From IMG/VR virus record IMGVR_UViG_3300024262_006558, positions 248,001 to 312,000 of that record: a stretch of 64,000 nucleotides of DNA, one strand, 5' to 3'. Below the pieces are notes generated by a model. It was given only the letters and a program-made list of their open reading frames with translations, was not told the origin of the DNA and did no database searches. The position numbers and the translations under genes were made by a program. Positions 10,719-25,567 of this stretch are shown here, in pieces; the first letter of the stretch is position 1, and each line of letters begins with the position of its first letter.

Positions 10719-10769
10719 TACATAATATCCCCCGCCCCGTATATATTATTGAATTTAAACGAAAAAATT

Positions 10770-11225: not shown

Positions 11226-11236
11226 ATATTATTACC

Positions 11237-11380: not shown

Positions 11381-11434
11381 AAAGTACATAGTTTCCCCAC
11401 CACCGTATATATTGGTGAACTTAATTAAAGCATT

Positions 11435-11758: not shown

Positions 11759-11763
11759 AAGTT

Positions 11764-12138
11764 ATGAGAACTAAAGTATTAGTATACGTAAAAGATGGTA
11801 TGATTCAAAGTGTTCATGCCAATGGCGGAGTAGAGGTTATTGTATTAGATGAAGAACAAGATTCAGCATCTAGCATAGAGCGACAAATGGTTCAAGAACA
11901 TACTATCGAGAAATTCGACCAGTTGGTTCAAGACTCTTGGAAAAGAACTTTAGAGAATGAGTTTAAATTCAATGATGAGGTAGAAGTAAGCCCTGATGGA
12001 GATGTTGTTACTCATGGGTTCTCAGGAAGAGTAATGGATGGTGTTCAAACCGATACAGATGGAAGTTTCTATGTGAACGTGAAAGACATGGATGATAATT
12101 GCTTTAGCGTTAACATTATGAATGTATCAATAGCATAA
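11764..12138 (+). CDS. hypothetical protein
   Basis: ORF track. Confidence 0.75.
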   Translation: MRTKVLVYVKDGMIQSVHANGGVEVIVLDEEQDSASSIERQMVQEHTIEKFDQLVQDSWKRTLENEFKFNDEVEVSPDGDVVTHGFSGRVMDGVQTDTDGSFYVNVKDMDDNCFSVNIMNVSIA

Positions 12139-12341
12139 AACTTTAAAGGAAAGACAGCAGGTGTGTTATAGCTCTCCCTATATAGGAAAGCGGTTTAAAA
12201 ATTACTCATATTCCTGCACGGACACAATGAAAGAAACGTAGGCGTAGCAATTGTGTGAACCTCCCCGTTGAGTTGACCTTTATTAAAAGTACATAATATC
12301 CCCCCGAACGTATATATTGGTGAACTAAAAAAGAAACAAAT

Positions 12342-12695
12342 ATGGGAGCAGAAACGTTTATGAATGTAGTACACGCAGTAACCGCAAAGGAAGCGTATCA
12401 ACAAGCAAAACAACAAGCTTGTTATGAACACGGTCATGGAGGTTATACGGGTACTATCGCAGAGAAGAGCGGTTATACTATGTCTAACAAGCCCGATGAA
12501 ATCGATGCAGACGATTGGGTAGAGATGATTGAGGGTTTCGATGAGGATGACACAGACCAAAAGCATTACTCTGAACTCAAAAAAGACTTCGGGGTATACG
12601 ATGACAAGTGGGGTGATGCTTTATGTATCGATTGCGGAAAAGTCGAAGGAAAGGATTATAATAAATACATATTATGCGGGTGGGCTTCTAGTTAA
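12342..12695 (+). CDS. conserved phage hypothetical protein
   Basis: GHGGYTGTIAEK motif. Confidence 0.8.
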   Translation: MGAETFMNVVHAVTAKEAYQQAKQQACYEHGHGGYTGTIAEKSGYTMSNKPDEIDADDWVEMIEGFDEDDTDQKHYSELKKDFGVYDDKWGDALCIDCGKVEGKDYNKYILCGWASS

Positions 12696-12716
12696 GCCAC
12701 CCATAAATTTATCACT

Positions 12717-13070
12717 ATGCAAGAATGTTTATTTGTAGTATTAAATAGCGCTAAGAATGGAACCATGATTTATCGAATGGTAGGATTCGATGAAGTGTAC
12801 TTCATTAATGAGAGAGAAGAATTGGCGGCTTTATTTACAGAGGATGGACGCTTAGTGAAGCAATGGAATAATATTTATGAGTTTCGTGAAGACTTCAGTA
12901 GAGATTGTTTCGAATCAGATGAGGATATGATGAGGGCTGAATATCAATTGAACATCAGCAAAAGAACATTAAACAAACCTTATGCGAAACTTGCTTCAGC
13001 TGAAGCCGTTGGAGAAAATCTCACCAAAGAATTGTGTATGAGAGCAATGAATCCAATATTTTATAATTAA
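12717..13070 (+). CDS. hypothetical protein
   Basis: ORF track. Confidence 0.7.
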   Translation: MQECLFVVLNSAKNGTMIYRMVGFDEVYFINEREELAALFTEDGRLVKQWNNIYEFREDFSRDCFESDEDMMRAEYQLNISKRTLNKPYAKLASAEAVGENLTKELCMRAMNPIFYN

Positions 13071-13252
13071 TATCAAAACCTAGGGTAAAAACCTTAGGTT
13101 TTTTTATGATCACATCTCTCGGAGAATTTCCGCAACTTCGTATACCTACATATTTCTATGTACTCATATGTGAAAAGCTGAAAAACAAAGTTTTCCTATA
13201 AGTACATAATATCCCCCGCCCCGTATATATTGGTGAACAAAACAAAAAGCAC

Positions 13253-13735
13253 ATGATAACTATAACATTAAATTTTCCAGAATACACAGATAGCTTTGAT
13301 GTTGAAGCTAATATTGTAGATGCTAGGAGATATGTAGCCCTTACTGAATTGGAAGTTTTTAAAGCAAGCTTTGAATGTAAGGTAATAATCTTCACACCTA
13401 AAAGTTATGTTAAGTATGTAGGCATTGAGGATATCGATAATGCAGCAAATGAAGTAATGGATTTTGTTAGAGACGTTGCAGGCATGGACAGCGATAGTGA
13501 TGAAGATGACGAGATGTACACTATAGTTCATGATATGATGCATGGAGGTTATGACGAAACAGAATTCGTTCCTTATTTCGAGACGGTAGAAGACGGTGTG
13601 CAGGTTATGCATGTATTGAAACAAAATTCAGCACCTAATATTTCAAAGTTAGAATTTGTGCAGGACTTACACTTTGACAGCCAAATACCTTATCATTTAA
13701 TAAAGGATGCTGTAGAAGAATTTCACGGATATTAA
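13253..13735 (+). CDS. hypothetical protein
   Basis: ORF track. Confidence 0.75.
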   Translation: MITITLNFPEYTDSFDVEANIVDARRYVALTELEVFKASFECKVIIFTPKSYVKYVGIEDIDNAANEVMDFVRDVAGMDSDSDEDDEMYTIVHDMMHGGYDETEFVPYFETVEDGVQVMHVLKQNSAPNISKLEFVQDLHFDSQIPYHLIKDAVEEFHGY

Positions 13736-13795
13736 AAATAAAGTACATAATATCCCCCGCTCCGTATATATTGGTGAACTAAAAACAAATATATT

Positions 13796-14080
13796 ATGGC
13801 AAAAATTGGAAACAAAGAGTATGATCTTTCAAATGAAAAAGAAAGAGAAGCTTACTGGGTAGCATACGCAAAGGAAAATTTTGTAGGTAAGAAAATAGTT
13901 TCGGCTAGATACCTAACGAAAAAAGAAGGTGAAGAAATGCACTGGTTTAGTAGACCAATAGTTTTCCAAATGGATGATGGTTCCTTAATGTTCCCATCTT
14001 GTGATGATGAGGGAAATGATGGAGGATCAATCTTTGGACAAAAGAAAAATGGCGAACATATTACTTGTCCAGTTCTTTAA
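13796..14080 (+). CDS. conserved phage hypothetical protein
   Basis: DDEGNDGG motif. Confidence 0.75.
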   Translation: MAKIGNKEYDLSNEKEREAYWVAYAKENFVGKKIVSARYLTKKEGEEMHWFSRPIVFQMDDGSLMFPSCDDEGNDGGSIFGQKKNGEHITCPVL

Positions 14081-14141
14081 AAAATAAAAAGGATCCAAGA
14101 ACTAACTTGGATCCATTATCAAACATTTAAATATTATTACC

Positions 14142-14651
14142 ATGGGATACACTCACTATTGGAAATTGCCGCAAGTAAGTAAATTAGACGCAGCTAAGTA
14201 TAACGCGTTTGTAAAAGATGTTAAAGAGCTGATGACAAACTTACCAGCTAATTCAGAAAGCGCAGGAGGTTATCATGAAGATGAGGACCTAGCTATCAGA
14301 GGAGGTCTTGGAGTTAAACTTCCAGAAATGAACTCACAGCATGTTTGGTTTAATGGAGACAATAACAAAAACATGGACCACGAGACTTTTGTCATCACAG
14401 CAGATGCAGGAGATGAAGAGGATTCTATGAGATGGTATAGAGGATTCCAGTTCTGTAAAACAGCTCGCAAGCCTTATGATTTATTAGTGTGCGCAGCGTT
14501 ACTCTCCCTAGAGCACCACTTCGGAAGAAGAGTTACTCAGGTTTCTAGTGACGGCGACTACAATGACTGGGAGCCAGCGATCAAATTCTACAGGGAGACT
14601 TTAAAAAGACCCGTTAAAAGATCAATCATTAATTATTTAAAGAAGGGATAA
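14142..14651 (+). CDS. conserved phage hypothetical protein (MGYTHYW type)
   Basis: MGYTHYW...HETF...FCKTARKPYD. Confidence 0.8.
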   Translation: MGYTHYWKLPQVSKLDAAKYNAFVKDVKELMTNLPANSESAGGYHEDEDLAIRGGLGVKLPEMNSQHVWFNGDNNKNMDHETFVITADAGDEEDSMRWYRGFQFCKTARKPYDLLVCAALLSLEHHFGRRVTQVSSDGDYNDWEPAIKFYRETLKRPVKRSIINYLKKG

Positions 14652-14668
14652 TTTAGTATCTTAGTCCC

Positions 14669-14869
14669 ATGAATAAAGATACGCATACAGAGACTCAATA
14701 CGTAGAGGAGTTTAGACGACTCCTCTACGATAACTATAGAGTTGACATCGATAAAGGGCCACTTAAGAAAAAGTACATAATTGCCCGCAAGTCGTATATA
14801 TTAGGCGAGAACGTTGAAGACGTAGTAGCTAATACGGCAGAGATGTTTAAGTTAATTCAAAGGAGGTGA
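14669..14869 (+). CDS. hypothetical protein containing a degenerate 36-bp repeat
   Basis: ORF track. Confidence 0.55.
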   Translation: MNKDTHTETQYVEEFRRLLYDNYRVDIDKGPLKKKYIIARKSYILGENVEDVVANTAEMFKLIQRR

Positions 14870-14876
14870 AGTAGGT

Positions 14877-15158
14877 ATGGATAAAACAGGAAATTTATTG
14901 GCAAAGTTATTCTCTACACATAGAGCGGACTTTAAAACTAATGAGAAATCATATCATTTCGCTTTAGGTTTTAGATTACAAAACAGCATTGACTCTTTAG
15001 ATAAATTAGAATTGGCTTACGGTTTTTCTTTATTAGAAACTTTAATCCAACAAGAAAAGTCTAAATCAGTTAAAAAGAAATTGACAGAGATAAAAACCGT
15101 GGGCATCTTCTCCCTATATAAGGAAGACTCTCCCCAGCATAAAACTATTGTTTCATAA
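14877..15158 (+). CDS. hypothetical protein
   Basis: ORF track. Confidence 0.55.
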   Translation: MDKTGNLLAKLFSTHRADFKTNEKSYHFALGFRLQNSIDSLDKLELAYGFSLLETLIQQEKSKSVKKKLTEIKTVGIFSLYKEDSPQHKTIVS

Positions 15159-15171
15159 AAAACTTATTATC

Positions 15172-15714
15172 ATGGGGTACCAAATAGAACTAAGAGGCGC
15201 CGAATTCAAAATCAAGAAAAGTAATGTTGATCAAGCGTTGCAGGCTTTGAAAGAATTCGTTAAGAATAAAAGAAACACTTTCATTGATGTGCCTGGTGTA
15301 GAGAATTCTAAGACTTTAGAAAAGGCTATGTTAAGTTGTAGATTTGTTTTAGACATCTCAACTGAGAAACAAAAACCTCTTCCTACTAAAGAAGAAATTT
15401 TGAAGGATGTTAGTTCAGCTTTGAAGATGGTTGAAGAAGATATGACCGTAGGATCAAATAAATCTATTGTTAAAGATTTATTAATTCAAGCGGAAGCAAA
15501 GTTGACGGCGAAACCAGAAGATATGATTTTAGTAACTGGAATCTCTTTTGAAGGTGAAAGTCAGGACGGATCAGAAGAGGCAATGTTTCAATCTATCGCT
15601 CCATTTGTTGAAGCCGATTCTTATATAGAGATGCAGGGCGAAGCAGGAGAAATTTGGAGATGGGTATTTGACGGGACAACCTGTGTAGAAAAAGTAGCAA
15701 ATTTAAATTTCTAA
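15172..15714 (+). CDS. conserved phage hypothetical protein
   Basis: IAPFVEADSYIEMQGEAGEIWRWVF. Confidence 0.75.
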   Translation: MGYQIELRGAEFKIKKSNVDQALQALKEFVKNKRNTFIDVPGVENSKTLEKAMLSCRFVLDISTEKQKPLPTKEEILKDVSSALKMVEEDMTVGSNKSIVKDLLIQAEAKLTAKPEDMILVTGISFEGESQDGSEEAMFQSIAPFVEADSYIEMQGEAGEIWRWVFDGTTCVEKVANLNF

Positions 15715-15716
15715 TT

Positions 15717-15860
15717 ATGGATCAGGAAATTATAGATTGGATCGAAGACGGTAATGCTGTGGAGATCAGGGACGGCGTATGGAAAGAACAAACTACTCAA
15801 TGGAGAAAAGAGTTCACCACTAAGGAATTAATTGACTTCTTCCATAGAGAATTTAGATAG
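15717..15860 (+). CDS. 47-aa hypothetical protein
   Basis: MDQEIIDWIEDGNAVEIRDGVWKEQTTQW...; TAG overlaps the next repeat. Confidence 0.65.
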   Translation: MDQEIIDWIEDGNAVEIRDGVWKEQTTQWRKEFTTKELIDFFHREFR

Positions 15861-15913
15861 TACATAATATCCCCCTGGTAGTATATATTGTTGAACTTAA
15901 ATTAAAAGAAATT

Positions 15914-16498
15914 ATGGCAGCACCTAAAAAAAGTTACGCAGTACAACCTTCCTGTTATTCAGATAGAAAGGCGGACTATAAAGAGCAAGAATATCTGAAC
16001 GAAGCATTCGAAACTATCTCTCATGAGGAAATGTATGAAGAGATCGATGGTAAAGAAAAGAAAGGTTTCGGAGGAACTTGTGGAAACATAGCCTGGGAGA
16101 TCAATTTTTCCAGACCTAAAAGAAAAGTTCTGGTAAACATCACTCCAGGAAAAGAAAATATGTTGGACAAAGGAGAAGAAGCTGTCAGATCTTATCAGGT
16201 AATCTCATCAGCATTCATGCTTTACAGAATGATCTGTATGTTTCCGAATCCTATTGTAGAGATGCAGGGATCAGAAGGGTACAAAGTCCCATGGTCGATC
16301 GCGCTTAAACATAAAGAAACAGGAGAGTTCTTTATTATTCGTGAATGGAAAGGTGGATTATCTTTTGCATCAGATGCCCATTCATTCAAAGATACACCTG
16401 CAAGCTTCACTAATGATGTACAGCGATTGTTGCAGCTGTTAGTTAGCGACAAGTCACCACATCCTTATGATGGAGTAACAGCAGGAGGTGTAGCATAA
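15914..16498 (+). CDS. hypothetical protein
   Basis: ORF track. Confidence 0.75.
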   Translation: MAAPKKSYAVQPSCYSDRKADYKEQEYLNEAFETISHEEMYEEIDGKEKKGFGGTCGNIAWEINFSRPKRKVLVNITPGKENMLDKGEEAVRSYQVISSAFMLYRMICMFPNPIVEMQGSEGYKVPWSIALKHKETGEFFIIREWKGGLSFASDAHSFKDTPASFTNDVQRLLQLLVSDKSPHPYDGVTAGGVA

Positions 16499-16500
16499 AC

Positions 16501-16538
16501 AAAAAAACCCTCATCTAATTAAAGATGAGGGTTTTTTA
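16501..16538. terminator. bidirectional intrinsic terminator
   Basis: AAAAAAACCCTCATCT...AGATGAGGGTTTTTT between convergent units. Confidence 0.8.
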
Positions 16539-16570
16539 TTTGCATACTACTATGGAAACTAACATGCTTG

Positions 16571-16671
16571 TGGGGGCGGAATAGATTCGAACTATCGACA
16601 CACTGGCTTTCACACCGAGCTGCTCTCAAGATCACGCCTCAAGGACGGATACCAAACTGAGCTACACCCCC
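16571..16671 (-). tRNA. non-canonical tRNA-like gene, copy 1 (Phe-like; D-loop hairpin insertion, 8-nt anticodon loop)
   Basis: Acceptor GGGGGTG/CGCCCCC, TAGCTCAGTTTGGT, GAGC, T-loop TTCGAAT; 23-nt insert in the D loop. Confidence 0.65.
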
Positions 16672-16697
16672 ATATAGAAAAAGCAAATTGCTTTTTG

Positions 16698-16797
16698 TGG
16701 GAACGGAATAGATTCGAACTATCGACACACTGGCTTTCACACCGAGCTGCTCTCAAGACTAACATCAAGTGTTAGCACCAGACTGAGCTACATTCCC
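16698..16797 (-). tRNA. non-canonical tRNA-like gene, copy 2
   Basis: Acceptor GGGAATG/CGTTCCC; same anticodon and T arms as copy 1; 22-nt D-loop hairpin. Confidence 0.65.
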
Positions 16798-16892
16798 ATG
16801 TAGTTAAAGATATAAAGGAAATTTGGAGAACTTGTTTTTTAATTTAAGATAATTTTTTAGAAGGAAGTCCAAGCATAGCCTTTAATCTTTTG

Positions 16893-16992
16893 TGGGAACG
16901 GAATAGATTCGAACTATCGACACACTGGCTTTCACACCGAGCTGCTCTCAAGACTAACATCAAGTGTTAGCACCAGACTGAGCTACATTCCC
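16893..16992 (-). tRNA. non-canonical tRNA-like gene, copy 3 (identical to copy 2)
   Basis: Direct 100-nt duplicate of 16698-16797. Confidence 0.65.
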
Positions 16993-17305
16993 ATATGTAA
17001 TAGGGGCTTATTTCGGATTTCATTCCGAGATAGATTCCCATATTAAGATTGTTGTTAAGAAGAAACCCTCTTGGTATCTTTATCCCTTATCAACAATACA
17101 AAAGTACTGTTTAAATATCATATTGTCAAGCATTAGATAGAAAAAAGTTTAAAAAGTTTTCTCTCCTCTGAGTTTTTCCGCAACTTCGTATACATAACCC
17201 TTTATCCATCAGACATTAAACTCAAAAAGCTGAAAAACAAAGTTTTCCTATAAGTACATAATATCCCCTCCACCGTATATATTGTCGAACGAAAAAGAAA
17301 CACTT

Positions 17306-18220
17306 ATGAAAATCTACTATAATCAATATAATATCGGTAAATCAAAGTATGTGGTAAAGCATCATGATGGTAAAAAAATCCATAAAGATGGAAGCAGGTT
17401 CTTTGATATTGCAATCTTTAGTAACAAAAAGAAACGCGACAGCTTTATAAAAGATCTGGAGGCGGATGGCTACACTCATAGAGATATGGCTATCAATACT
17501 TACTCTGGCTTAAAAAACAGAATTAAAGATTCTGATGTTGCTCGCTGGGTAATGACGTTCAATGAACCAGTAGTGATTAATAAGTTATCACGATATGGAA
17601 ATTGGAAAGAAAACGAAGATGGATCTAAATCTAAAAGCAAGAAAGCTAAAAAAACTTATAATGTATACTTACGCATTATCAATGGCAGCTTAACATATGC
17701 AGCAAGCAAAAAAGCTAGGTTTTGGAACTATGTAGAATTAGGTCTTCCTTTCTCTAAAATAGTAGACTTAAAACCACATATGTCAAAAACAGAAAAGATG
17801 TCCCCAGAAGAGTACAACAAAGCGGAATGTCAAAAGTTCATCAATAGATGTCATCCAAATATTTGGAATGAAATCAAAGAAGAATGTAAAATGTTCATAG
17901 AAACAGGGGACGAAGAACATCTTCCTAGCTTTATAAGATATAATGGCAAATGTAAGTTTGTTTCCATAAAAGGTAAAATGGGAGATTCTTATGCAGGGAA
18001 GCATACTATTGAAGCTTTGAAAAAAGCAATGGATGAGAATGGGGATTACAGAACATCATTTAGTGCTATGGCTCCACAAGGGAGAGATAGAAGTTTCTCT
18101 GTAGCAACTTCTAATGGAGAAACTAGGGCTTGGTTCTCATCGGAATTCCCTGGATGTGGAAATGGTGACTATTACTTACTAATAAATCCAACTACAGCAG
18201 TATTCTGTGAAAGAGATTAG
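17306..18220 (+). CDS. multidomain hypothetical phage protein
   Basis: N-terminal YNIGKSKYVVKHHDG...HKDGS.FFDIAIF; C-terminal SSEFPGCGNGDYYLLIN. Confidence 0.8.
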   Translation: MKIYYNQYNIGKSKYVVKHHDGKKIHKDGSRFFDIAIFSNKKKRDSFIKDLEADGYTHRDMAINTYSGLKNRIKDSDVARWVMTFNEPVVINKLSRYGNWKENEDGSKSKSKKAKKTYNVYLRIINGSLTYAASKKARFWNYVELGLPFSKIVDLKPHMSKTEKMSPEEYNKAECQKFINRCHPNIWNEIKEECKMFIETGDEEHLPSFIRYNGKCKFVSIKGKMGDSYAGKHTIEALKKAMDENGDYRTSFSAMAPQGRDRSFSVATSNGETRAWFSSEFPGCGNGDYYLLINPTTAVFCERD

Positions 18221-18270
18221 TACATAATATCCCCGCCACCGTATATATTGTCGAACGAAAAGAAAACAAC

Positions 18271-19095
18271 ATGAAAACATTAATTCAATTCAGAAAAACA
18301 AGAAAGGTAATTTCCCCAAGAGAATTAGAGAATATACTTGGCTTGAATGTTATCGATGAGGCAAACAAAGGAGTAAATGAGATCCTATTGTATGCAGGAA
18401 GATACTATATATTCATAACCGAAAACGGAGAATACTATACAGAGTTTTCTAATTGCTCACACTTACATCCTACTTTGGAAAGAGTAGAAGAAGCGTTGTG
18501 GGATGACTTTGCGAAATGGGAAGAAATAGATATTGATGAGATCGAAGAAGAGCTACACCAAAGAGCACGGGATCTTCTAGATAATACTGAGTTCCCTGCG
18601 CTGAGCTTGGATGAGGCAATCGCTGAAGGATTGACTAATCCATTCCATCACCAGCAAGCTTATTATCTTATGGATAAATTTGAACACCTTGCTAATGCAA
18701 TTGAGCCAGATGTAAAAAAAGAGTTCTCACCAGAAGAAGTGATACAATTTTCAAAAAATATGTCCCAACTTCTGTATGAAATGTACATAGAAAGTGAGTC
18801 CTCTAAAACGATACAATTCGAGTTCGATGAATTCTTAGAGCCAATCCCTGTAGAGTTTGTTGAAAAGACGTTGGATGACCCAATTTACATGGCTGCAATG
18901 AAAGCTGTAGTGTTTTATGAGCTGCTGTCAAATTTGAAAGATCCTGAAACTCAAAAGTTCTATACGGACAAAGAGGGAGCGTTAGCGTATAGGCCTGAAC
19001 TGAGAGATTATGATGCATCGTTTGATACATACATAAGAGATGTGTATGCTAGAGCATTAAAGTCAGGAGCTGAATCATATCCAGTAGAAAGTTAA
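18271..19095 (+). CDS. hypothetical acidic protein
   Basis: ORF track. Confidence 0.75.
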   Translation: MKTLIQFRKTRKVISPRELENILGLNVIDEANKGVNEILLYAGRYYIFITENGEYYTEFSNCSHLHPTLERVEEALWDDFAKWEEIDIDEIEEELHQRARDLLDNTEFPALSLDEAIAEGLTNPFHHQQAYYLMDKFEHLANAIEPDVKKEFSPEEVIQFSKNMSQLLYEMYIESESSKTIQFEFDEFLEPIPVEFVEKTLDDPIYMAAMKAVVFYELLSNLKDPETQKFYTDKEGALAYRPELRDYDASFDTYIRDVYARALKSGAESYPVES

Positions 19096-19187
19096 AAACA
19101 AAGAAGTACATAATGTCCCCGCCATGGTATATATTGGTGAAAGAAAGTTAAAGTAAAATAAATTGTTAAACAAAACCCAGAAAAATT

Positions 19188-19784
19188 ATGAAAAAGTTAT
19201 TAAGTATTTTATTTGCAATGTTATTATTCATTGCCCTACCTTCCTGCGAAAAAGAAGATGACACAAAACCTTCAAATGATCCTACAGTAACCGATGACGG
19301 AGGAGGAGTAACAACCACCGATCCAACGGTGACAGCCACCGTGCATTTTGTTCTTACCCATGAAGACAGCTGGAACGATCCCAATGCGTTAGGAGATTAC
19401 GGAACACCTTACGCTTACGTGAGCACAGATAGCTCAGCTTTAGAAGCAAGAGTCGCTGATCCTTATCTAAATAATAATGAGATAGTCTCAGTCTTTTCTC
19501 TAATTCAAAAACCCAATAACGATATAAGTCCCTGCGTTTTCACAAGCTCTACCACATATCAAAATACAAGCAATATAAGAGATAGGAAACTTACATCTAA
19601 AATAGGTCAGAAAATACATATAGTAATAGCTACTAGTACTTATCATCCAGAACTAGGCAAATCAATAAAGGTAGTCACACATAGAGGCAGCATTAAGATT
19701 AACAGCTATGGTATAGAGAGTATTAGCACAGAAAAAGGTGTCTTTGTATCTAGTTGCGCTAAAGCTATAGGTATAAAGTATTAA
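19188..19784 (+). CDS. lipoprotein
   Basis: MKKLLSILFAMLLFIALPS-C-EKEDD: signal peptide II with acidic residues after Cys, as in Bacteroidota surface lipoproteins. Confidence 0.75.
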   Translation: MKKLLSILFAMLLFIALPSCEKEDDTKPSNDPTVTDDGGGVTTTDPTVTATVHFVLTHEDSWNDPNALGDYGTPYAYVSTDSSALEARVADPYLNNNEIVSVFSLIQKPNNDISPCVFTSSTTYQNTSNIRDRKLTSKIGQKIHIVIATSTYHPELGKSIKVVTHRGSIKINSYGIESISTEKGVFVSSCAKAIGIKY

Positions 19785-19936
19785 CCACACAAGGAGATGA
19801 TATAGTCTGTAACCCAACAGGGTCCGAAAGCGGAATTCGGGTCTCCACTAAATAAATTTAAAGAAATGTTGCTAAATTGGAAACTTTTATTTTAATTGCA
19901 ACGTATACACAAACGGAAACTAAAACAAAAAAGCTT

Positions 19937-20515
19937 ATGAAAAATTCAACATTAGTAATTGCTGCACAAAATGGATGTCAAAAATCATTATCTAAGTTAT
20001 ACGCTCAATGCTATCCATTGCTAGTTAGAACTGTAAAAAGTAAAATGGGAGGTCGTAGAGACTCTCAACTTGTAGAAGACATAGCACAAGAGTCTATGAT
20101 CAAAGGGTTTCAAAGGATCAATGAATATAAGCCAAGCTTTAGCTTTAATACTTGGTTAGGGAGAATTGCATACAACCTAATGATTGACTTTACACGTAAG
20201 AATTCAAGAACATCGATTACCACTATAGACGGAGATGAGCGTGAAGATGAGAAGTTCTCCCTAACTAGCGTTCTTGCTAGTGAAGACTCTCTCCCTGACA
20301 TGATGATCATTGATGAAGAAACTAAAGCGAGGATCAACGCAATCATTAAGCACACTCTTAGTGAGGATATGCAAGAGGTTATTAAGATGAGATATTTCGA
20401 TGGATTATCTTATGAAGATATGAAGGATGAGCTTGATATCCCAATGGGGACTTTGAAAGCGCAGGTATTCAGAGCTCACAAAGCTTTAAAGAAATCAGCG
20501 CTAGCTGCAATCTAA
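19937..20515 (+). CDS. RNA polymerase ECF sigma-70 factor
   Basis: Region 2 VEDIAQESMIKGFQRINEYKPSFSFNTWLGRIAYNLMIDFTRK; region 4 MRYFDGLSYEDMKDELDIPMGTLKAQVFRA. Confidence 0.92.
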   Translation: MKNSTLVIAAQNGCQKSLSKLYAQCYPLLVRTVKSKMGGRRDSQLVEDIAQESMIKGFQRINEYKPSFSFNTWLGRIAYNLMIDFTRKNSRTSITTIDGDEREDEKFSLTSVLASEDSLPDMMIIDEETKARINAIIKHTLSEDMQEVIKMRYFDGLSYEDMKDELDIPMGTLKAQVFRAHKALKKSALAAI

Positions 20516-20784
20516 TGAATAGAAAAGAAACAAATATCCATATGGAACATTGCACATCAAGAGCATGTAAATATGGAGAGGAAAAAATCTGCCCTGCTGT
20601 GTCAAACAGAAAGGGTGGATCCTTTTCTTTTGAAGCAACTGCACATAAGACGGGAGAAAGCCCCGCTGCAGTATGGACCGATGGGCTAGGTCTTTCTAAT
20701 GACGACCTGCCTCACAAAAGCTATATCCTGATGCCAGGAAAAAGGTATAGAGTAACCGTAGAACAAATTGAAGATGAAGGATAA
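20515..20784 (+). CDS. hypothetical protein
   Basis: ORF track; translationally coupled to the sigma gene. Confidence 0.65.
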   Translation: MNRKETNIHMEHCTSRACKYGEEKICPAVSNRKGGSFSFEATAHKTGESPAAVWTDGLGLSNDDLPHKSYILMPGKRYRVTVEQIEDEG

Positions 20785-21112
20785 GATATTCAAAGTAAAC
20801 GCCGTCCTGGGAGAGAAAGGCTATAAACACTTCGGAATACATCCCTGCACTTGTTCCTTGTATGGTAGCAAAGAAGAAGATATTATAGAATTAGGAGTAG
20901 AAATAGCTGAAGATCAATCTCTCCCTGACAAGGATACTGGCACTGAAGAAGCTGACTACTGGGCCTGGCTGCCTGAAGGAAAAGACGGATTCTCCCTAAT
21001 GGTGTATCCTCAATACTTTCTATTGAACATGTGTTTCCCATATGGAATAAAATCTTCGGAAGAAGCTGGGCATGGAAAAGCATATAGAATTAATATCATA
21101 AAAGAATTGTAA
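20774..21112 (+). CDS. hypothetical protein
   Basis: ORF track. Confidence 0.7.
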   Translation: MKDKIFKVNAVLGEKGYKHFGIHPCTCSLYGSKEEDIIELGVEIAEDQSLPDKDTGTEEADYWAWLPEGKDGFSLMVYPQYFLLNMCFPYGIKSSEEAGHGKAYRINIIKEL

Positions 21113-21200
21113 TTTATTGAAACATATTTCATTTCTTTTCGTTAATATAAATCCAGGGGTTAAGAGCCCAACAATAAGTTCATAAGTTTAGTTTCCATTA

Positions 21201-21234
21201 AAAGCAAGTAACCTTTGTGGTTACTTGCTTTTTT
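21201..21234 (+). terminator. intrinsic terminator
   Basis: AAAGCAAGTAACC-tttgt-GGTTACTTGCTTTTTT. Confidence 0.85.
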
Positions 21235-21270
21235 ATTTCCTTTCTATCCAGTAATGTTTATATTTGTAAT

Positions 21271-21831
21271 ATGGATGTGAAGAAGTTCGAACAATTTTCA
21301 GACCTTGAATGGCAACGTCACTTCAGAGCTAATGAAGCTTCTGAAGAACTGATAGAAACTTATGCCTGCCAATTTAATGAGACTACCTGGAAAGTTATAT
21401 GCCAATACCAAAAATTAAGCGGAGACTTCATCACTACATTTAAATTTGAGCTTCCTATAAGAGATTTACTACAGCATCAGGTAGTACATCAGAATATCAT
21501 TGAAAATGATATAAACTTTTTTAAAGATTACATGTATCACATATGTAAACATCAGTATATTACTGAAGACTTTATCATAAGACATGATAATATAGTTAAC
21601 TGGCCAAGCGTATTTAGATACCAAGAACATCTATCTATCGTATTCATTAAGAGGACCTTCTCTAAATATTTTGGCAATAAAGAATTCCTGGACGGAAGCA
21701 GGGCTACTCAATACTTTTCTAGCCCCGTAGCTCTTAGGTGGCGTAAGAAATTGTCAGAAATAGTGTCACAGCACAACATTAAAACTTCTATAGTCCGCCA
21801 GGCTAGACATAGAATGTCATCCCATAAATAA
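21271..21831 (+). CDS. tryptophan-repeat family protein
   Basis: Repeats such as YQKLSGDFITTFK and HQYITEDFIIRHDNIVNW. Confidence 0.7.
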   Translation: MDVKKFEQFSDLEWQRHFRANEASEELIETYACQFNETTWKVICQYQKLSGDFITTFKFELPIRDLLQHQVVHQNIIENDINFFKDYMYHICKHQYITEDFIIRHDNIVNWPSVFRYQEHLSIVFIKRTFSKYFGNKEFLDGSRATQYFSSPVALRWRKKLSEIVSQHNIKTSIVRQARHRMSSHK

Positions 21832-21898
21832 TTTCCTTAATCCAGGAAACAAAATTCATTTTATTTCGTTAATTAAGTATTGAAACTCATTTAATACA

Positions 21899-22219
21899 AT
21901 GACAAAAAAAGAAAAAGAAAACTTAGCATTTATTTTGTTTGAATCTCATCCTGAGATGGCAACTATGAATGTGCTAAATAATTACCCAGACATAAAGAAA
22001 GCCTATAACAAACTAAAGGAACAAAGCAATAAAAAAGAATCCTCTTATGAAGCTGAAACCCAGAAGATGAAAGAAAACTATATGAATATAGGTAAAAAGT
22101 ATTCAGGTAGATTATTCTTTGGAGACTCTATGAGGTTTGATGTAGATGGAGACGGAAAAGAAAAAGCAGATAAAGATTGGCAAAAATTATATGGGACAAA
22201 ATATCCCACAAGCATTTAA
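21899..22219 (+). CDS. hypothetical protein
   Basis: ORF track, after a class II promoter. Confidence 0.7.
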   Translation: MTKKEKENLAFILFESHPEMATMNVLNNYPDIKKAYNKLKEQSNKKESSYEAETQKMKENYMNIGKKYSGRLFFGDSMRFDVDGDGKEKADKDWQKLYGTKYPTSI

Positions 22220-22239
22220 GTAATTGTAGGTTAGCAATA

Positions 22240-22660
22240 AATAAACGCGGAGCATTAAGGAAGGTACAACTTAATGAAAAGCTGAGGTCGGCGAATCAGC
22301 TGTTAACTTACATTTAAGGCTAAACATTGATCCATTGTGGGGCTACTCTTAATTGAGTACTAGTTTTCACATAAAGATACCAGTCGAAATACTGGATGTG
22401 TTGTTCCATGTGAGAAAGGAATGTTAGAGAGGTAACTTCTGGAAACGGACATAACACCTACAACACAAATGAGCAAGTATCCGTGAGGACTCGGACTGCA
22501 ATCCTAGTTAAAGCTAACATGCTTATAGTATGTTACTATACTAGCTTTCGACAGTTTCTCAGCAAGTAGTTGAAGGATAATCGGAGTAAAACTAGAAATA
22601 GATAATAGTCCGACTAAGAATAAACTACGTGACCGTACCAAGTAATGTTGACGGTGCTAA
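22240..22660 (+). ncRNA. large structured ncRNA candidate (GOLLD/ROOL-like)
   Basis: ORF-free ~420 nt with at least 8 stems plus a long-range pseudoknot, CTAGTTTT 22360-22367 / AAAACTAG 22588-22595. Confidence 0.65.
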
Positions 22661-22721
22661 ATAAATATAACTACATTGAAACATTTACTAAATTATTTCG
22701 TTAACTAAAATAAAAAACATT

Positions 22722-23195
22722 ATGACTAAATCAAAAAACTCTACTGAAGTAGCAAAGGCATCTTTAACTTTAACTCAAGCTGATGTGCCTGCTCAAATAG
22801 ACCTGCTGAAAAAACAACTACAAGAAATCCAAGGAGACGGAAAAACAAAAATCTCTACCGATGTCTCCTATAAAGGTAGTAAAATCAACAAAGTCTCTAC
22901 AGTAAAAGAACTGTTAGAAATATCAGCTTCAATACATGCTAGAGCTAAAGCATTTGAAGAAGAAACCGCCAGATATAAAATGGAAGGTAAATTAGATAAA
23001 TTCCAAACAGAAGGACACACTCCAGAACAATGGAAACTTATTATAGAAAAAGCAATCTTTGATAAAGTGAACAGTGTGCAAATAAGTAATATTAAAAAAG
23101 CTATCTCTGAACTAGAAGAATTCCTTAGCGATGAAGCTAAACTACAAAACAAACTGTCGCAAATTGTCAATATGGCTAACCAAAAAATAGCATAA
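22722..23195 (+). CDS. hypothetical coiled-coil protein
   Basis: ORF track, after a class II promoter. Confidence 0.75.
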   Translation: MTKSKNSTEVAKASLTLTQADVPAQIDLLKKQLQEIQGDGKTKISTDVSYKGSKINKVSTVKELLEISASIHARAKAFEEETARYKMEGKLDKFQTEGHTPEQWKLIIEKAIFDKVNSVQISNIKKAISELEEFLSDEAKLQNKLSQIVNMANQKIA

Positions 23196-23241
23196 CATAA
23201 AAGAGCCTTTCAATAGGCTCTTTTTTTTTACTCTCTCTACT

Positions 23242-23448
23242 ATGAAAAAAGAAATCTTGTTTGAACTTAATCGCTTTGGTGATAGAAAATATTATCTTGA
23301 TGATGAACTCCATAGAGAAGATGGCCCAGCCGTTGAATATTCTAATGGAGATAAAGAGTGGCGCCTGAATGGTAAAGAATTAACCGAAGAAGAGTTTAAT
23401 AAGAAGATAACCGAATTGAATGTGTCTAAAATACACGAGCTATGGTAA
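23242..23448 (+). CDS. HREDGPA-repeat protein, array gene 1 (1 unit)
   Basis: 22-aa WxLNGKxHRxDGPA repeat (MORN-variant-like) plus tail ELTEEEFNKKITELNVSKIHELW. Confidence 0.8.
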   Translation: MKKEILFELNRFGDRKYYLDDELHREDGPAVEYSNGDKEWRLNGKELTEEEFNKKITELNVSKIHELW

Positions 23449-23855
23449 AGCAAGAACCTATATGTAAAACAACTGCCTATGGAGATAAGCATTGGTATCT
23501 CAATGGAAAGCAACATCGTGAAGATGGTCCAGCCGTTGAATGGGCTGATGGAACTAAATTCTGGTACCTCAATGGAAAACGCCATAGAGAAGATGGCCCA
23601 GCCGTTGAATATGCATATGGAACTAAAGCTTGGTGGATTAATGGAGAACTACATAGATTAGGAGGACCATCAGTCACTGATGAAGATGGTAAGTTCTGGT
23701 ACCTCAATGGAAAACGCCATAGAGAAGATGGTCCAGCCGTTGAATATAACGATGGAACTAAAGAATGGTTTCTTAATGGTAAAAAATTAACCGAAGAAGA
23801 GTTTAATAAGAAGATAACCGAATTGAATGTGTCTAAAATACATGAGCTATGGTAG
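23442..23855 (+). CDS. HREDGPA-repeat protein, array gene 2 (4 units)
   Basis: Same repeat and tail; 7-nt overlap with gene 1. Confidence 0.85.
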   Translation: MVKQEPICKTTAYGDKHWYLNGKQHREDGPAVEWADGTKFWYLNGKRHREDGPAVEYAYGTKAWWINGELHRLGGPSVTDEDGKFWYLNGKRHREDGPAVEYNDGTKEWFLNGKKLTEEEFNKKITELNVSKIHELW

Positions 23856-24127
23856 AACAGGAACCTATATGTAAAACAACTTCCGATGGAACTAAAAACT
23901 GGTTTCTGAATGGAAAGCATCATCGTGAAGATGGGCCAGCCGTTGAATATACTAATGGAGATAATCACTGGTTCCTTCATGGAAAACGCCATAGAGAAGA
24001 TGGTCCAGCTGTTGAATTAGCAGGTGGATATAAATATTGGTTCCTTCATGGTAAAGAATTAACCGAAGAAGAATTTAATAAGAAGATAACCGAATTGAAT
24101 GTGTCTAAAATACATGAGCTATGGTAG
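23849..24127 (+). CDS. HREDGPA-repeat protein, array gene 3 (2 units)
   Basis: MVEQEPICKTT head, IHELW tail. Confidence 0.85.
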   Translation: MVEQEPICKTTSDGTKNWFLNGKHHREDGPAVEYTNGDNHWFLHGKRHREDGPAVELAGGYKYWFLHGKELTEEEFNKKITELNVSKIHELW

Positions 24128-24399
24128 AACAGGAACCTATATGTAAAACAACTTCCGATGGAGATAAATGTTGGTACCTGAATGGAAAAAGGCATAGAGA
24201 AGATGGTCCAGCTATTGAATATGCCGATGGAGACAAAGAATGGTGCCTGAATGGAAAACGCCATAGAGAAGATGGTCCAGCTGTTGAATTAGCAGGTGGA
24301 TATAAATATTGGTTCCTTCATGGTAAAGAATTAACCAAAAAAGAGTTTAATAAAAAGATCTCCGAATTGAATGTGTCTAAAATACACGAGCTATGGTAG
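24121..24399 (+). CDS. HREDGPA-repeat protein, array gene 4 (2 units)
   Basis: Same head, repeat and tail. Confidence 0.85.
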   Translation: MVEQEPICKTTSDGDKCWYLNGKRHREDGPAIEYADGDKEWCLNGKRHREDGPAVELAGGYKYWFLHGKELTKKEFNKKISELNVSKIHELW

Positions 24400-24671
24400 A
24401 ACAGGAACCTATATGTAAAACAACTGCCGATGGAGATAAGCATTGGTATCTGAATGGAAAGCATCATCGTGAAGATGGTCCAGCTATTGAAAGGGTTAAT
24501 GGATCTAAATACTGGTATCTGAATGGAAAGCATCATCGTGAAGATGGTCCAGCTATTGAATATGCCAATGGAGATAAATACTGGTTTCTCAATGGTAAAG
24601 AATTAACCGAAGAAGAATTTAATAAGAAGATAACCGAATTGAATGTGTCTAAAATACACGAGCTATGGTAG
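24393..24671 (+). CDS. HREDGPA-repeat protein, array gene 5 (2 units)
   Basis: Same head, repeat and tail. Confidence 0.85.
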   Translation: MVEQEPICKTTADGDKHWYLNGKHHREDGPAIERVNGSKYWYLNGKHHREDGPAIEYANGDKYWFLNGKELTEEEFNKKITELNVSKIHELW

Positions 24672-25009
24672 AACAGGAACCTATATGTAGATTATTTCCA
24701 GATGGAACTAAACAATGGTACCTAAATAGAAAGCTTCATCGTGAAGATGGGCCAGCCGTTGAATATACTAATGGAGATAAATGTTGGTTTATTAATGATA
24801 AACTTCATAGATTAGATGGCCCAGCTGTGGAGTCTATTGGAGATAAGCAATGGTGTTTAAATGGAAAAAGACATCGTGAAGATGGCCCAGCTGTTGAATG
24901 TTCTGATGGAGATAAATTTTGGTTTCTTAATGGTAAAAAATTAACCGAAGAAAAATACAATGAAGAGATCGCTAAATTGAATGCATCTAAAATACATGAG
25001 TTATGGTAG
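24665..25009 (+). CDS. HREDGPA-repeat protein, array gene 6 (3 units)
   Basis: Same head, repeat and tail. Confidence 0.85.
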   Translation: MVEQEPICRLFPDGTKQWYLNRKLHREDGPAVEYTNGDKCWFINDKLHRLDGPAVESIGDKQWCLNGKRHREDGPAVECSDGDKFWFLNGKKLTEEKYNEEIAKLNASKIHELW

Positions 25010-25488
25010 AACAAGAACCTATATGTAAAACATGTTCCAATGGAGATAAAGAATGGTATCTCAATGGAAAACTACATAGAGTAGATGAGCCAGCTATTGA
25101 ATCTGCCAATGGACATAAACTATGGTATCTCAATGGAAAGCAACATCGTGAAGATGGTCCAGCTTGTGAATATGCCAATGGAGATAAATCTTGGTACCTG
25201 AATGGAGAAAGGCATAGAGAAGATGGTCCAGCTATTGAATCTGCCAATGGAGATAAATCTTGGTTCCTTCATGGAAAACGCCATAGAGAAGATGGTCCAG
25301 CTATTGAATCTGCCAATGGACATAAACTATGGTATCTCAATGGAAAAAGGCATAGAGTAGATGGTCCAGCCTGTGAATGGAGCAATGGAGACAAAGAATG
25401 GTTCCTTCATGGGAAAGAGTTAAGCGAAGAAGAATTTAATAAGAAGATCTCCGAATTGAATGCATCTAAAATACACGAGCTATGGTAA
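25003..25488 (+). CDS. HREDGPA-repeat protein, array gene 7 (5 units)
   Basis: Same head, repeat and tail. Confidence 0.85.
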   Translation: MVEQEPICKTCSNGDKEWYLNGKLHRVDEPAIESANGHKLWYLNGKQHREDGPACEYANGDKSWYLNGERHREDGPAIESANGDKSWFLHGKRHREDGPAIESANGHKLWYLNGKRHRVDGPACEWSNGDKEWFLHGKELSEEEFNKKISELNASKIHELW

Positions 25489-25567
25489 AAAGCTGAAAAG
25501 TTAACTTTCCTAAAAAGTACATAATTTCCCTGATGTTGTATATATTGGTGAATTTAGAATATAGATT

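What the first reader, a model, noticed from the sequence alone, without database searches (positions are those of the whole stretch)
19879..22702. Phage-encoded ECF sigma factor with a readable regulon, and two ECF-shaped promoter classes
Seen: an ECF sigma gene (19937-20515) is preceded by GGAAAC-N17-CGTA. TGAAAC/GGAAAC-N16-CGTT occurs at 21118, 21845 and 22677 on + and at 41610-41635 on -; an N17 version is at 54744-54770 on -. Established: TGAAAC-N16-CGTA is the SigW-type ECF promoter architecture, and ECF genes are commonly autoregulated. The 36-bp repeat has the same spacing (AAGTAC-N16-CGTA) but GTAC in place of AAAC. Inference: a three-tier programme of host TAnnTTTG promoters, class II promoters for this sigma, and class I promoters for a second, re-specified sigma that may be encoded elsewhere. 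No adjacent anti-sigma was recognised.
Basis: partly seen in the sequence, partly recalled or inferred. Interest (0 to 1): 0.7.

Follow-up and report, generated by a model that had tools for sequence, protein, structure and literature searches.

The report
Phage ECF sigma factor and its promoters
A giant phage of a Bacteroidota-type host, with no RNA polymerase found in the 388 kb searched, encodes an ECF-type sigma factor whose roughly 30 target promoters can be read from the DNA, one of them in front of a phage copy of the host's main sigma factor, which suggests a sigma cascade of a kind already known from other phages.

Summary
Window 19937-20515 encodes a 192-aa ECF sigma factor, with Pfam regions 2 and 4 and best matches to SigW and RpoE.

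Genome-wide the motif is G(A/C)AAC(A)-N16/17-CGTT. There are 29 fully intergenic copies against 0.4 expected, and 27 of 30 intergenic copies point into the adjacent gene. Only GAAAC or GCAAC, only CGTT, and only spacers of 16 or 17 are enriched. Sites are kept at the same intergenic positions in three related metagenomic phages.

Targets are accessory genes, a tRNA array and a second, RpoD-like phage sigma, but no recognised structural gene.

Autoregulation is doubtful. The site before the sigma gene departs from the consensus. Its CGT is lost in 48%-identity relatives. Its GGAAAC belongs to a TTGGAAACTw box that also precedes the other sigma gene.

The 36-bp class I repeat (54 copies) is conserved through its spacer and is not ECF-shaped. 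No second ECF sigma was found, only two RpoD-like ones.

A late class (TATTTATAA) and host-like TTG-N-TAnnTTTG promoters also exist.

Verdict: a new member of a known kind, with no transcript data available.

The parts
19937..20515 (+). ECF (group 4) sigma factor gene, 192 aa. The true start is ATG 19937, not the TTG at 19877 used in the public gene call.
   Evidence: Pfam regions 2 and 4 plus Sigma70_ECF. NCBIfam ECF superfamily above cut-off, best model SigW. PDB matches to RpoE at 3.9e-19 and SigW at 3.7e-16. Orthologues in L009 and L010 start at the equivalent ATG.
19877..19918 (+). Conserved block upstream of the sigma gene: a TTGGAAACTT box (19877-19886), CGTA at 19902-19905, and a second GGAAACT at 19912-19918. 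It is either a variant class II promoter or a separate regulatory box.
   Evidence: Alignment with L009 and L010-L012: the box is invariant, and CGT becomes CAT in L010-L012. The same box lies upstream of sigma#2 and its orthologues. It is the only well-placed CGTA site of its kind.
20515..20784 (+). 89-aa ORF coupled to the sigma gene by an ATGA overlap. It is not conserved.
   Evidence: No Pfam or PHROG match. Broken by stop codons in L009 and absent in L010.
20774..21112 (+). 112-aa ORF, the last gene of the sigma operon, of unknown function.
   Evidence: Conserved directly after the sigma gene in L010-L012 as a 110-aa ORF with an ATGA overlap. Truncated in L009. No family match.
21118..21143 (+). 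Class II promoter, TGAAAC-N16-CGTT.
   Evidence: The syntenic site in L010 (1384-1409) reads GCAAC-N17-CGTTAT.
21200..21232 (+). Intrinsic terminator (14-bp stem followed by a T run). It lies between the 21118 promoter and the gene at 21271. It ends the sigma operon and would also give a short RNA of about 85 nt from the 21118 promoter.
   Evidence: Terminator scan. Fold of -24.8 kcal/mol, z -3.8.
21271..21831 (+). 186-aa gene downstream of the 21118 promoter.
   Evidence: PHROG 3532, function unknown. Orthologue in L010 at 1866-2432.
21845..21870 (+). Class II promoter, GGAAAC-N16-CGTT, 29 nt upstream of gene 21899-22219.
   Evidence: The syntenic site in L010 (2441-2466) reads ACAAC-N17-CGTTAT.
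22677..22702 (+). Class II promoter, TGAAAC-N16-CGTT, 20 nt upstream of gene 22722-23195.
   Evidence: The orthologous promoter TGAAAC-N16-CGTT lies before the orthologous gene in L009 at 3481-3505.
41610..41635 (-). Class II promoter, TGAAAC-N16-CGTT, 31 nt upstream of the 654-aa gene 39615-41579.
45749..45774 (-). Class II promoter of the GCAAC type (N17), 9 nt upstream of gene 45171-45740, so the mRNA is probably nearly leaderless.
46472..46496 (-). Possible class II site (AGCAAC-N16-CGTT), 83 nt upstream of the ankyrin-repeat gene 45775-46389. It is the palindromic counterpart of the + strand match at 46470.
   Evidence: A host-type promoter at 46395-46426 lies closer to the gene.
49801..49826 (-). 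Class II promoter of the GCAAC type (N17), 40 nt upstream of the 691-aa gene 47686-49761. An intron-bearing tRNA follows that gene.
54744..54769 (-). Class II promoter, GAAACA-N17-CGTT, 33 nt upstream of gene 54349-54711.
1154..25545 (+). The window's share (27 copies) of the class I array of 36-bp promoters, aAGTACATAaTaTCCCC-N6-GTATATATTGgTGAA. Each copy lies 22-26 nt upstream of a small gene. The last copy before the sigma gene is at 19106.
   Evidence: There are 54 copies confined to genome 230,299-273,517, 53 of them on the + strand.

Best explanation
The 192-aa protein is a phage-encoded ECF (group 4) sigma factor. It binds the host core RNA polymerase and directs it to about 30 phage promoters with the consensus (T/G/A)G(A/C)AACA-N15/16-CGTT(A/T). 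This is the canonical ECF layout: 'AAC' at -35, 'CGT' at -10 and a spacer of 16-17 bp.

The gene lies at the 3' end of the array of class I early promoters, with no terminator between the class I promoter at 19106 and the sigma gene. It is therefore probably first made by read-through with the early genes. The operon ends at the terminator at 21200-21232.

The sigma then switches on a dispersed middle set of targets: three promoters just downstream of its own operon, accessory enzymes, homing endonucleases, a tRNA array, and a phage copy of the host-type primary sigma (genome 215,581-216,444). This gives a sigma cascade. Structural genes use a different, late promoter class.

No anti-sigma factor is involved, so activity is set by when the gene is transcribed.

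Shown: the protein family, and the existence, specificity, placement and conservation of the promoter class. Inferred: that this sigma, and not another, reads the class; its timing; and the cascade.
For: Protein. It has regions 2 and 4 only and resembles SigW and RpoE.

Motif statistics:
- 29 fully intergenic G[AC]AAC-N16/17-CGTT sites against 0.41 +/- 0.62 in composition-matched random intergenic sequence, maximum 3 in 200 trials.
- 27 of 30 intergenic sites point into the adjacent gene.
- 23 sites lie 5-60 nt upstream of a start on the same strand.

Specificity controls:
- Of the 16 possible NNAAC pentamers only GAAAC (9 sites) and GCAAC (14 sites) are enriched.
- Of 13 variants tried at -10 only CGTT is enriched (23 sites).
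- Of spacers 12-21 only 16 (17 sites) and 17 (6 sites) are enriched.

Architecture: it matches what is established for ECF sigmas. 'AAC' at -35 and 'CGT' at -10 are general features, and TGAAAC/CGTA is the SigW form (PMC5758882).

This is the only ECF sigma in the 388-kb record.

Comparative evidence:
- L009 (sigma 71% identical) keeps TGAAAC-N16-CGTT before the orthologue of gene 22722, and has GCAAC-N16-CGTT before a tRNA.
- L010 (48% identical) keeps xCAAC-N17-CGTTAT at the two syntenic intergenic positions.
- Orthologues of sigma#2 in L033 and L034 keep xAAACA-N17-CGTTA upstream.

No RNA polymerase genes were found. This fits the jumbo-phage group that lacks its own polymerase and carries sigma factors instead (PMC7824862).

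The late class TATTTATAA, not class II, precedes the terminase, major head and tail-fibre-like genes.
Against: There are no transcript data. No RNA run was listed, and the only holder is the source DNA metagenome. Transcription start sites and dependence on this sigma are therefore untested.

A host ECF sigma could read the same motif.

The two -35 variants (GAAAC and GCAAC) could belong to two different factors.

The sigma gene's own upstream site departs from the consensus and is not conserved at CGT, so the usual ECF hallmark of autoregulation is missing or altered.

105 kb of the 494-kb source contig lie outside the record and could not be searched.

Gene starts come from a simple ORF caller, so some promoter-to-ATG distances may be off.
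Confidence: 0.72

Rival explanations
1. Class II promoters are read by a host ECF sigma, for example an envelope-stress sigma induced by infection. The phage ECF sigma would then have other targets or would simply reinforce the host factor.
For: AAC/CGT promoters are common to many cellular ECF sigmas, and overlapping recognition between them is frequent (PMC5758882). The phage sigma's own gene lacks a consensus class II promoter.
Against: The phage carries its own ECF sigma. Its closest relatives (48-71% identity) are all on phage-like contigs that carry the same motif. Cellular homologues are at most about 34% identical. A phage gains nothing from a dedicated set of 30 promoters that depends on an unpredictable host stress state.
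Confidence: 0.1
2. The phage ECF sigma reads the 36-bp class I promoters (AAGTAC-N16-CGTA), and another factor reads class II.
For: The gene sits inside the class I array. Class I shares the N16 spacing, and 41 of 54 copies have CGTA, the same -10 tetramer as the sigma gene's own upstream site.
Against: Class I has no AAC at -35. It is invariant across the spacer (TCCCC), which is unlike promoters read by a sigma alone. Its C is variable. The protein is closest to SigW and RpoE, whose -35 is GAAAC or GGAAC. Class II would be left without a reader, because no other ECF sigma was found.
Confidence: 0.07
3. GAAAC-type and GCAAC-type promoters are two classes read by two different factors or at different times. 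Only the GAAAC subset, which clusters next to the sigma gene, belongs to this sigma.
For: The three sites beside the sigma gene and the site before sigma#2 are all GAAAC. GCAAC sites are spread elsewhere.
Against: The two subsets share the same -10 (CGTTA/T), the same spacers, the same A after AAC and the same T-rich spacer end. In L010 the positions syntenic to GAAAC sites carry GCAAC or ACAAC, so the two forms interchange during evolution.
Confidence: 0.08
4. The motif is a chance or compositional feature, or a non-promoter element such as a protein-binding site or RNA signal.
For: No expression data exist.
Against: Enrichment is about 70-fold over composition-matched intergenic sequence. 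There is strict strand bias toward the downstream gene, narrow tolerance in spacer, -35 and -10, and conservation at syntenic positions.
Confidence: 0.03

Closest known systems
Bacillus subtilis SigW (ECF01) and E. coli RpoE / P. aeruginosa AlgU
   Same: Two-domain sigma of about 190 aa with regions 2 and 4. These are the best NCBIfam and PDB matches. The promoter layout is TGAAAC-N16-CGT, like SigW (PMC5758882).
   Different: Only about 30% identical, and below every equivalog cut-off. The -10 is CGTT rather than CGTA, and GCAAC is accepted at -35. It is phage-borne, has no anti-sigma partner, and its own gene has no consensus autoregulatory promoter.
Coliphage phiEco32 gp36 (and SU10 gp32), a phage sigma annotated as ECF type
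   Same: A phage-encoded small sigma that retargets host core polymerase to middle and late phage promoters (PMC4281155).
   Different: gp36 promoters are described as a single motif, tAATGTATAtA, just upstream of the start site. Here the promoters are bipartite -35/-10 ECF promoters. The phiEco32 genome is 77 kb with one sigma. This phage is at least 388 kb with three.
Bacillus phage SPO1 gp28 then gp33/34, and T4 gp55/gp33 (from my own knowledge)
   Same: A temporal programme run by successive phage sigma factors on host core polymerase. Here one phage sigma gene (sigma#2) sits behind a promoter of the class assigned to another phage sigma.
   Different: Those sigmas are highly diverged or truncated and are not ECF type. 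Here the second sigma is a 51%-identical copy of the Bacteroidota primary sigma. The link to late promoters is only inferred.
RpoE-like sigma of rhizobiophages PhiM9 and P10VF; 'sigma-W' genes annotated in crAss-like phages; sigE of Microcystis phage MaAM05
   Same: ECF-type sigma genes carried by phages (PMC4621102; tblastn hits at 24-31% identity).
   Different: The sources seen here give only annotation or speculation about their role, with no promoter class. Identity to the present protein is low.
Group 2 jumbo phages (Iyer et al. 2021)
   Same: No RNA polymerase of their own, reliance on phage sigma factors, and RpoD-like versions present (PMC7824862).
   Different: The passages read describe minimal (gp55-like) and RpoD-like sigmas. 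The term ECF does not occur in the paper.

Membership tests
ECF (group 4) sigma-70 family | Only regions 2 and 4 are present, with no region 1.1 or 3, in a protein of about 170-220 aa. | tested here: met
   192 aa. Sigma70_r2 covers residues 21-92 and Sigma70_r4_2 covers 140-184. No r3 or r1 hit. The ECF superfamily model TIGR02937 scores 91.6 bits against a cut-off of 42.9.
ECF (group 4) sigma-70 family | Cognate promoters have a conserved AAC in -35 and a short group-specific -10 (often CGT), 16-17 bp apart. | tested here: met
   A class G(A/C)AAC-N16/17-CGTT exists with strong enrichment and specificity. That this particular sigma reads it is inferred, not shown.
ECF (group 4) sigma-70 family | Positive autoregulation from a cognate promoter upstream of its own gene. 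This is common but not universal. | tested here: inconclusive
   The upstream site is GGAAACT-N17-CGTA, which departs from the regulon consensus. CGT becomes CAT in L010-L012. The GGAAAC is part of a box shared with the sigma#2 gene.
ECF (group 4) sigma-70 family | A co-transcribed anti-sigma factor. This is typical but not universal. | tested here: not met
   The two downstream ORFs have no family match. The 89-aa ORF is not conserved. No zf-HC2 or FecR domain is present in the record. Structure-based or binding tests were not run.
SigW equivalog (NCBIfam NF007223 / TIGR02948) | Score above the curated equivalog cut-off. | tested here: not met
   95.5 bits against 209, and 82.7 bits against 243. 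The protein resembles SigW but is not a SigW orthologue.
Phage sigma cascade (SPO1 / T4 type temporal control) | A phage sigma gene is itself transcribed from a promoter of the class read by an earlier phage sigma. | tested here: met
   GGAAACA-N16-CGTTAT lies 42 nt upstream of the RpoD-like sigma#2 gene (genome 215,515). Equivalent sites precede its orthologues in L033 and L034. The dependence is inferred from sequence only.
Phage sigma cascade (SPO1 / T4 type temporal control) | Successive sigmas are shown to drive early, middle and late transcription in that order. | not testable with these tools
   No RNA run was listed for this phage.

The most novel reading that the evidence does not exclude
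A megaphage of a Bacteroidota host, at least 388 kb long (its contig is 494 kb), has no RNA polymerase of its own and runs a four-tier programme with three phage sigma factors. A canonical ECF sigma is made at the end of the early array. It opens a middle regulon of about 30 promoters that includes a phage copy of the primary sigma, and that sigma then reads the TATTTATAA late promoters. The 36-bp class I early promoters, and the TTGGAAACTw box shared by both sigma genes, would be read by factors not yet identified. This would be the first phage ECF regulon with textbook AAC/CGT promoters, and an ECF-to-primary-like sigma relay.
Probability: 0.3. Interest if true: 0.7.

Novelty: new member of a known kind. 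Interest (0 to 1): 0.5.

Why it matters
Phage sigma factors that retarget host polymerase are a classic theme, and ECF-type sigma genes are annotated in many uncultured phages. In the sources seen here they appear only as annotation or speculation, with no promoter class given.

In this phage the whole target set can be read from the sequence with very clean specificity. It shows what such a sigma controls in a giant phage: accessory genes, tRNAs and another sigma, but not recognised structural genes. It also offers a compact, anti-sigma-free and probably orthogonal sigma/promoter pair from a Bacteroidota system, where genetic parts are scarce.

The finding gives a concrete and testable map of four promoter classes and three sigmas for an uncultured megaphage.

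Tried and rejected
- Megablast of the region against cultured phage records found no match.
- A scan of IMG/VR with peptide patterns from the sigma found no relatives. A scan of IMG/VR with the class I pattern also found none.
- A metagenome scan with the class I pattern found only the source contig and two contigs of the L010 phage.
- No RNA sequencing run was listed. The only holder is one DNA run from a subsurface metagenome, probably the source. Start-site mapping was therefore impossible and read laying was not used.
- Rfam found nothing in 21100-28200 at E <= 1. The 457-nt gap 22220-22676 folds no better than shuffles, z -1.75.
- T7-type and multisubunit RNA polymerase domains are absent from the record. 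The PF00940 search also rang in none of its control genomes, so that negative is weak.
- The 105 kb of the source contig outside the record could not be searched.
- The 89-aa ORF with an H-x3-C...C pattern was considered as a zinc anti-sigma factor. It was rejected because it is broken in L009, absent in L010 and has no zf-HC2 match.
- Complex prediction was not sent. I do not claim that the sigma binds the 112-aa neighbour.
- Reading class I as a host-type promoter was considered. Its 3' half (TATATTGG) is one base from TAnnTTTG, but no TTTG lies at -33, so this is left open.
Full report
CONTEXT

The window is bases 248,001-312,000 of a 388,594-bp virus record with 34% G+C. The record is the first 388 kb of a 494,080-bp metagenome contig, JGI 3300024262 Ga0210003_1000004. 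The one run that holds the sequence is labelled subsurface metagenome.

The record encodes a large terminase, a major head protein and tail-fibre-like proteins. It also has ribonucleotide reductase-like and NAD-synthase-like genes (read by eye from the translations) and ten tRNAs.

No T7-type or multisubunit RNA polymerase domain was detected. The record therefore belongs with the jumbo phages that lack a polymerase and carry sigma factors (PMC7824862).

One of its sigma genes is 51% identical to the 287-aa primary sigma of Cytophagales and other Bacteroidota. Host-like TTG-N18-21-TAnnTTTG promoters occur in intergenic regions. The host is therefore probably a member of Bacteroidota.

THE SIGMA GENE

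Window 19937-20515 encodes a 192-aa protein with Sigma70 region 2, region 4 and ECF-model matches.
- NCBIfam places it in the ECF superfamily above the cut-off. SigW, SigY and RpoE are the best specific models, all far below their equivalog cut-offs.
- The best solved relatives are E. coli RpoE, the 6in7 chain deposited as 'sigma-H factor' (which I take to be P. aeruginosa AlgU, from my own knowledge) and B. subtilis SigW.
- Among 5.8 billion proteins only three are close (71, 60 and 48% identity), all on short phage-like contigs. Everything else is at most about 34% identical.
- The public gene call starts at the TTG at 19877. The orthologues support the ATG at 19937.

THE PROMOTER CLASS

GAAAC-N16/17-CGTW is found 10 times in the window against 0.87 expected.

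Over the genome, 13 of 20 matches are intergenic, although only 7.5% of the genome is intergenic.

The motif is G(A/C)AAC, usually followed by A, then 16 or 17 bp, then CGTT, usually followed by A or T.

The specificity controls are clean:
- Of all 16 NNAAC pentamers only GAAAC (9 well-placed sites) and GCAAC (14) are enriched.
- Of 13 tetramers tried at -10 only CGTT is enriched (23 sites).
- Of spacers 12-21 only 16 (17 sites) and 17 (6 sites) are enriched.

There are 29 fully intergenic copies against 0.41 +/- 0.62 in composition-matched random intergenic sequence. Of 30 intergenic copies, 27 point into the adjacent gene. Distances from CGTT to the ATG are mostly 9-42 nt, and the shortest imply nearly leaderless mRNAs.

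This is the ECF architecture established in the literature: AAC at -35, CGT at -10, and TGAAAC/CGTA for SigW (PMC5758882).

In the window the class comprises:
- 21118, 21845 and 22677 on the + strand.
- 41610, 45749, 49801 and 54744 on the - strand.
- Possibly 46472 on the - strand.

COMPARATIVE SUPPORT

- L009 (a TARA ocean contig, sigma 71% identical) has the same gene order, class I promoters, the conserved block upstream of the sigma gene, and TGAAAC-N16-CGTT in front of the orthologue of gene 22722. It also has GCAAC-N16-CGTT in front of what looks like a tRNA.
- L010 (sigma 48% identical) carries GCAAC- and ACAAC-N17-CGTTAT at the two intergenic positions syntenic to the window's 21118 and 21845 sites. 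The flanks have diverged.
- Orthologues of the RpoD-like sigma in L033 and L034 keep xAAACA-N17-CGTTA upstream.

The class and its positions are therefore conserved across a small clade of uncultured phages that also carry this sigma.

WHAT THE REGULON CONTAINS

The first genes behind well-placed sites are mostly of unknown function. The recognisable ones are:
- a cpYpsA SLOG protein;
- HNH and LAGLIDADG endonucleases;
- a YqeY-like protein;
- an HATPase_c protein;
- a microbial PARG;
- a metallophosphatase;
- an ankyrin-repeat protein;
- the RpoD-like sigma#2 (genome 215,581-216,444).

The GAAAC-N17-CGTA site at genome 376,991 on the - strand lies upstream of the ten-tRNA array. None of the first genes that matched a family is structural.

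Terminase, major head and tail-fibre-like genes instead sit behind a different motif, tttt-N6-TATTTAtaa-aAAa, 21-27 nt upstream of the ATG. This motif has about 60 candidates, mostly in genome 0-200 kb. Class II therefore looks like a middle or accessory class, and TATTTATAA like the late class.

AUTOREGULATION IS DOUBTFUL

The site upstream of the sigma gene has GAAACT instead of GAAACA, and CGTA instead of the otherwise invariant CGTT.

The block is well conserved in relatives, but in L010-L012 the CGT is CAT.

Its GGAAAC is embedded in a 10-mer, TTGGAAACTw. The same 10-mer lies about 96 nt upstream of sigma#2 in this genome. It also lies upstream of the sigma#2 orthologues, once in L033 and twice in L034, with no CGT at the right distance in those places.

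A second GGAAACT follows 34 bp downstream of the first one at the ECF gene. I read this as a separate element common to the two sigma genes, either an operator or another promoter type. I give classical autoregulation about 0.3.

No terminator was detected between the class I promoter at 19106 and the sigma gene. The first convincing terminator is at 21200-21232, after the 112-aa ORF. In L009 the sigma gene directly follows a gene driven by class I. Read-through from the early array is therefore the simplest source of the first sigma molecules.

CLASS I

There are 54 copies, all within genome 230,299-273,517, and 53 are on the + strand. Typically each lies 22-26 nt upstream of a small ORF.

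The logo is aAGTACATAaTaTCCCC-N6-GTATATATTGgTGAA. The spacer block TCCCC is invariant, and the C that would make 'CGTA' is present in 41 of 54 copies.

This is not the pattern of an ECF promoter, which has a variable spacer. No second ECF sigma exists in the record. The other two sigmas, of 285 and 287 aa, are RpoD-like with regions 2, 3 and 4.

Sigma#1 lies in an operon behind a host-like TTG-N20-TAGATTTG promoter. Which factor reads class I is open. The 3' half (TATATTGG) is one base from the Bacteroidota -7 element TAnnTTTG and resembles the TAwwTTGG that overlaps the TTGGAAACT box. This hints at a primary-like sigma helped by a factor bound to the 5' half, but that is speculation.

ANTI-SIGMA

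None was recognised.
- The 89-aa ORF that overlaps the sigma stop codon is broken in L009 and absent in L010.
- The 112-aa ORF is conserved directly behind the sigma gene in L010-L012 but truncated in L009. It matches no family.
- No zf-HC2 or FecR domain occurs in the record.

For a lytic programme, timing by transcription alone is sufficient.

COMPARISON AND NOVELTY

Phage sigmas that retarget host polymerase are classical. ECF-type ones are annotated in several places:
- phiEco32 and SU10, where the promoters are described as a single motif (PMC4281155);
- rhizobiophage PhiM9 (PMC4621102);
- crAss-like phages, Microcystis phage MaAM05 and uncultured phage records of about 640 kb.

What is new here is a phage ECF sigma paired with a textbook bipartite promoter class of about 30 members, including a promoter in front of a phage copy of the primary sigma. 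That is a new member of a known kind. The link between sigma and motif, the timing and the cascade all remain inferences from sequence, because no transcript data could be found.

CONFIDENCE

- ECF sigma gene is real: 0.98.
- Class II is a genuine promoter class: 0.93.
- Class II is read by this sigma: about 0.72.
- ECF to sigma#2 relay: about 0.6.
- Sigma#2 reads the late class: about 0.3.
- Autoregulation through the 19879 site: about 0.3.
- Class I is read by a second ECF-like sigma: less than 0.1.

Noticed in passing
window 47539-47672 (-): A tRNA scoring 55.6 bits in Rfam has 66 nt where the model has 5 in the anticodon loop, so it carries an insert or intron of about 61 nt. ARAGORN did not call it. 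It lies just downstream of the class II-driven gene 47686-49761.
   Followed up: partly
window 25865-28100; L010 2600-4890: A stretch of about 2.2 kb with no convincing ORF, partly conserved in the 48%-identity relative L010. It holds four spaced copies of TTTCCGCAAnnTCGTAAAC (26103-26585), a hybrid element with a class I 5' half followed by CCAAC-N17-CGTT (26632-26675), and two palindromes: GTTTCCA-N3-TGGAAAC and GGTTTTTC-N7-GAAAAACC (about 27009-27070). No Rfam match. It could be an origin, a packaging site or a non-coding RNA region.
   Followed up: partly
window 4327, 6509, 7915, 13112, 17160 (+): The same TTTCCGCAAnTTCGTAwAC element lies 60-100 nt upstream of a subset of class I promoters, often followed by AAAGCTGAAAA. 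Its role is unknown.
   Followed up: no
window 21144-21240 (+): The class II promoter at 21118 is followed after about 55 nt by a strong terminator (21200-21232), before gene 21271. This predicts a short RNA or leader of about 85 nt. L010 has a weaker hairpin plus T run at the same place.
   Followed up: partly
window 22220-22676: A 457-nt gap with no ORF between gene 21899-22219 and the 22677 promoter. It has no Rfam match, its fold is not better than shuffles, and L009 lacks it. It may be a decayed gene.
   Followed up: partly
window 19877-19886; genome 215,481-215,490; L033 about 1372; L034 about 405 and 427: A TTGGAAACTw box lies upstream of both the ECF sigma gene and the RpoD-like sigma gene, and of their orthologues in related phages. 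It may be a shared control element of the sigma genes.
   Followed up: partly
genome 0-205 kb, e.g. upstream of genome 56134-57885 (terminase) and 99639-101297 (major head): A late promoter class, tttt-N6-TATTTAtaa-aAAa, lies 21-27 nt upstream of the ATG, with about 60 candidates. By eye the core is the reverse complement of the T4 late motif TATAAATA (from my own knowledge).
   Followed up: partly
window 7706-7737 (+), 46395-46426 (-), 57999-58030 (-), and genome 317-325 kb: Host-like TTTG-N19-21-TAnnTTTG promoters end only 4-6 nt before the ATG. This suggests leaderless mRNAs. Several class II sites (9-11 nt from the ATG) suggest the same.
   Followed up: no
window 23242-25488 (+) and 28800-34500 (-): Large arrays of paralogous genes built from 69-nt (23-aa) repeats of the YLNGKxHREDGPA type, which look like MORN repeats (by eye, from my own knowledge). 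Many share an identical C-terminal tail.
   Followed up: no
window 16566-16994: Three copies of a 107-nt repeat (two identical) in a region without ORFs. The nearby sequence has TΨC-arm-like GGTTCGAAT-type strings on the - strand. They may be tRNA-derived elements.
   Followed up: no
genome 52149, 275015 (window 27015), 387639: GTTTCC-N2-8-GGAAAC palindromes. At two class II promoters (genome 52129 and 387619) the -35 GGAAAC is one arm of such a palindrome.
   Followed up: no
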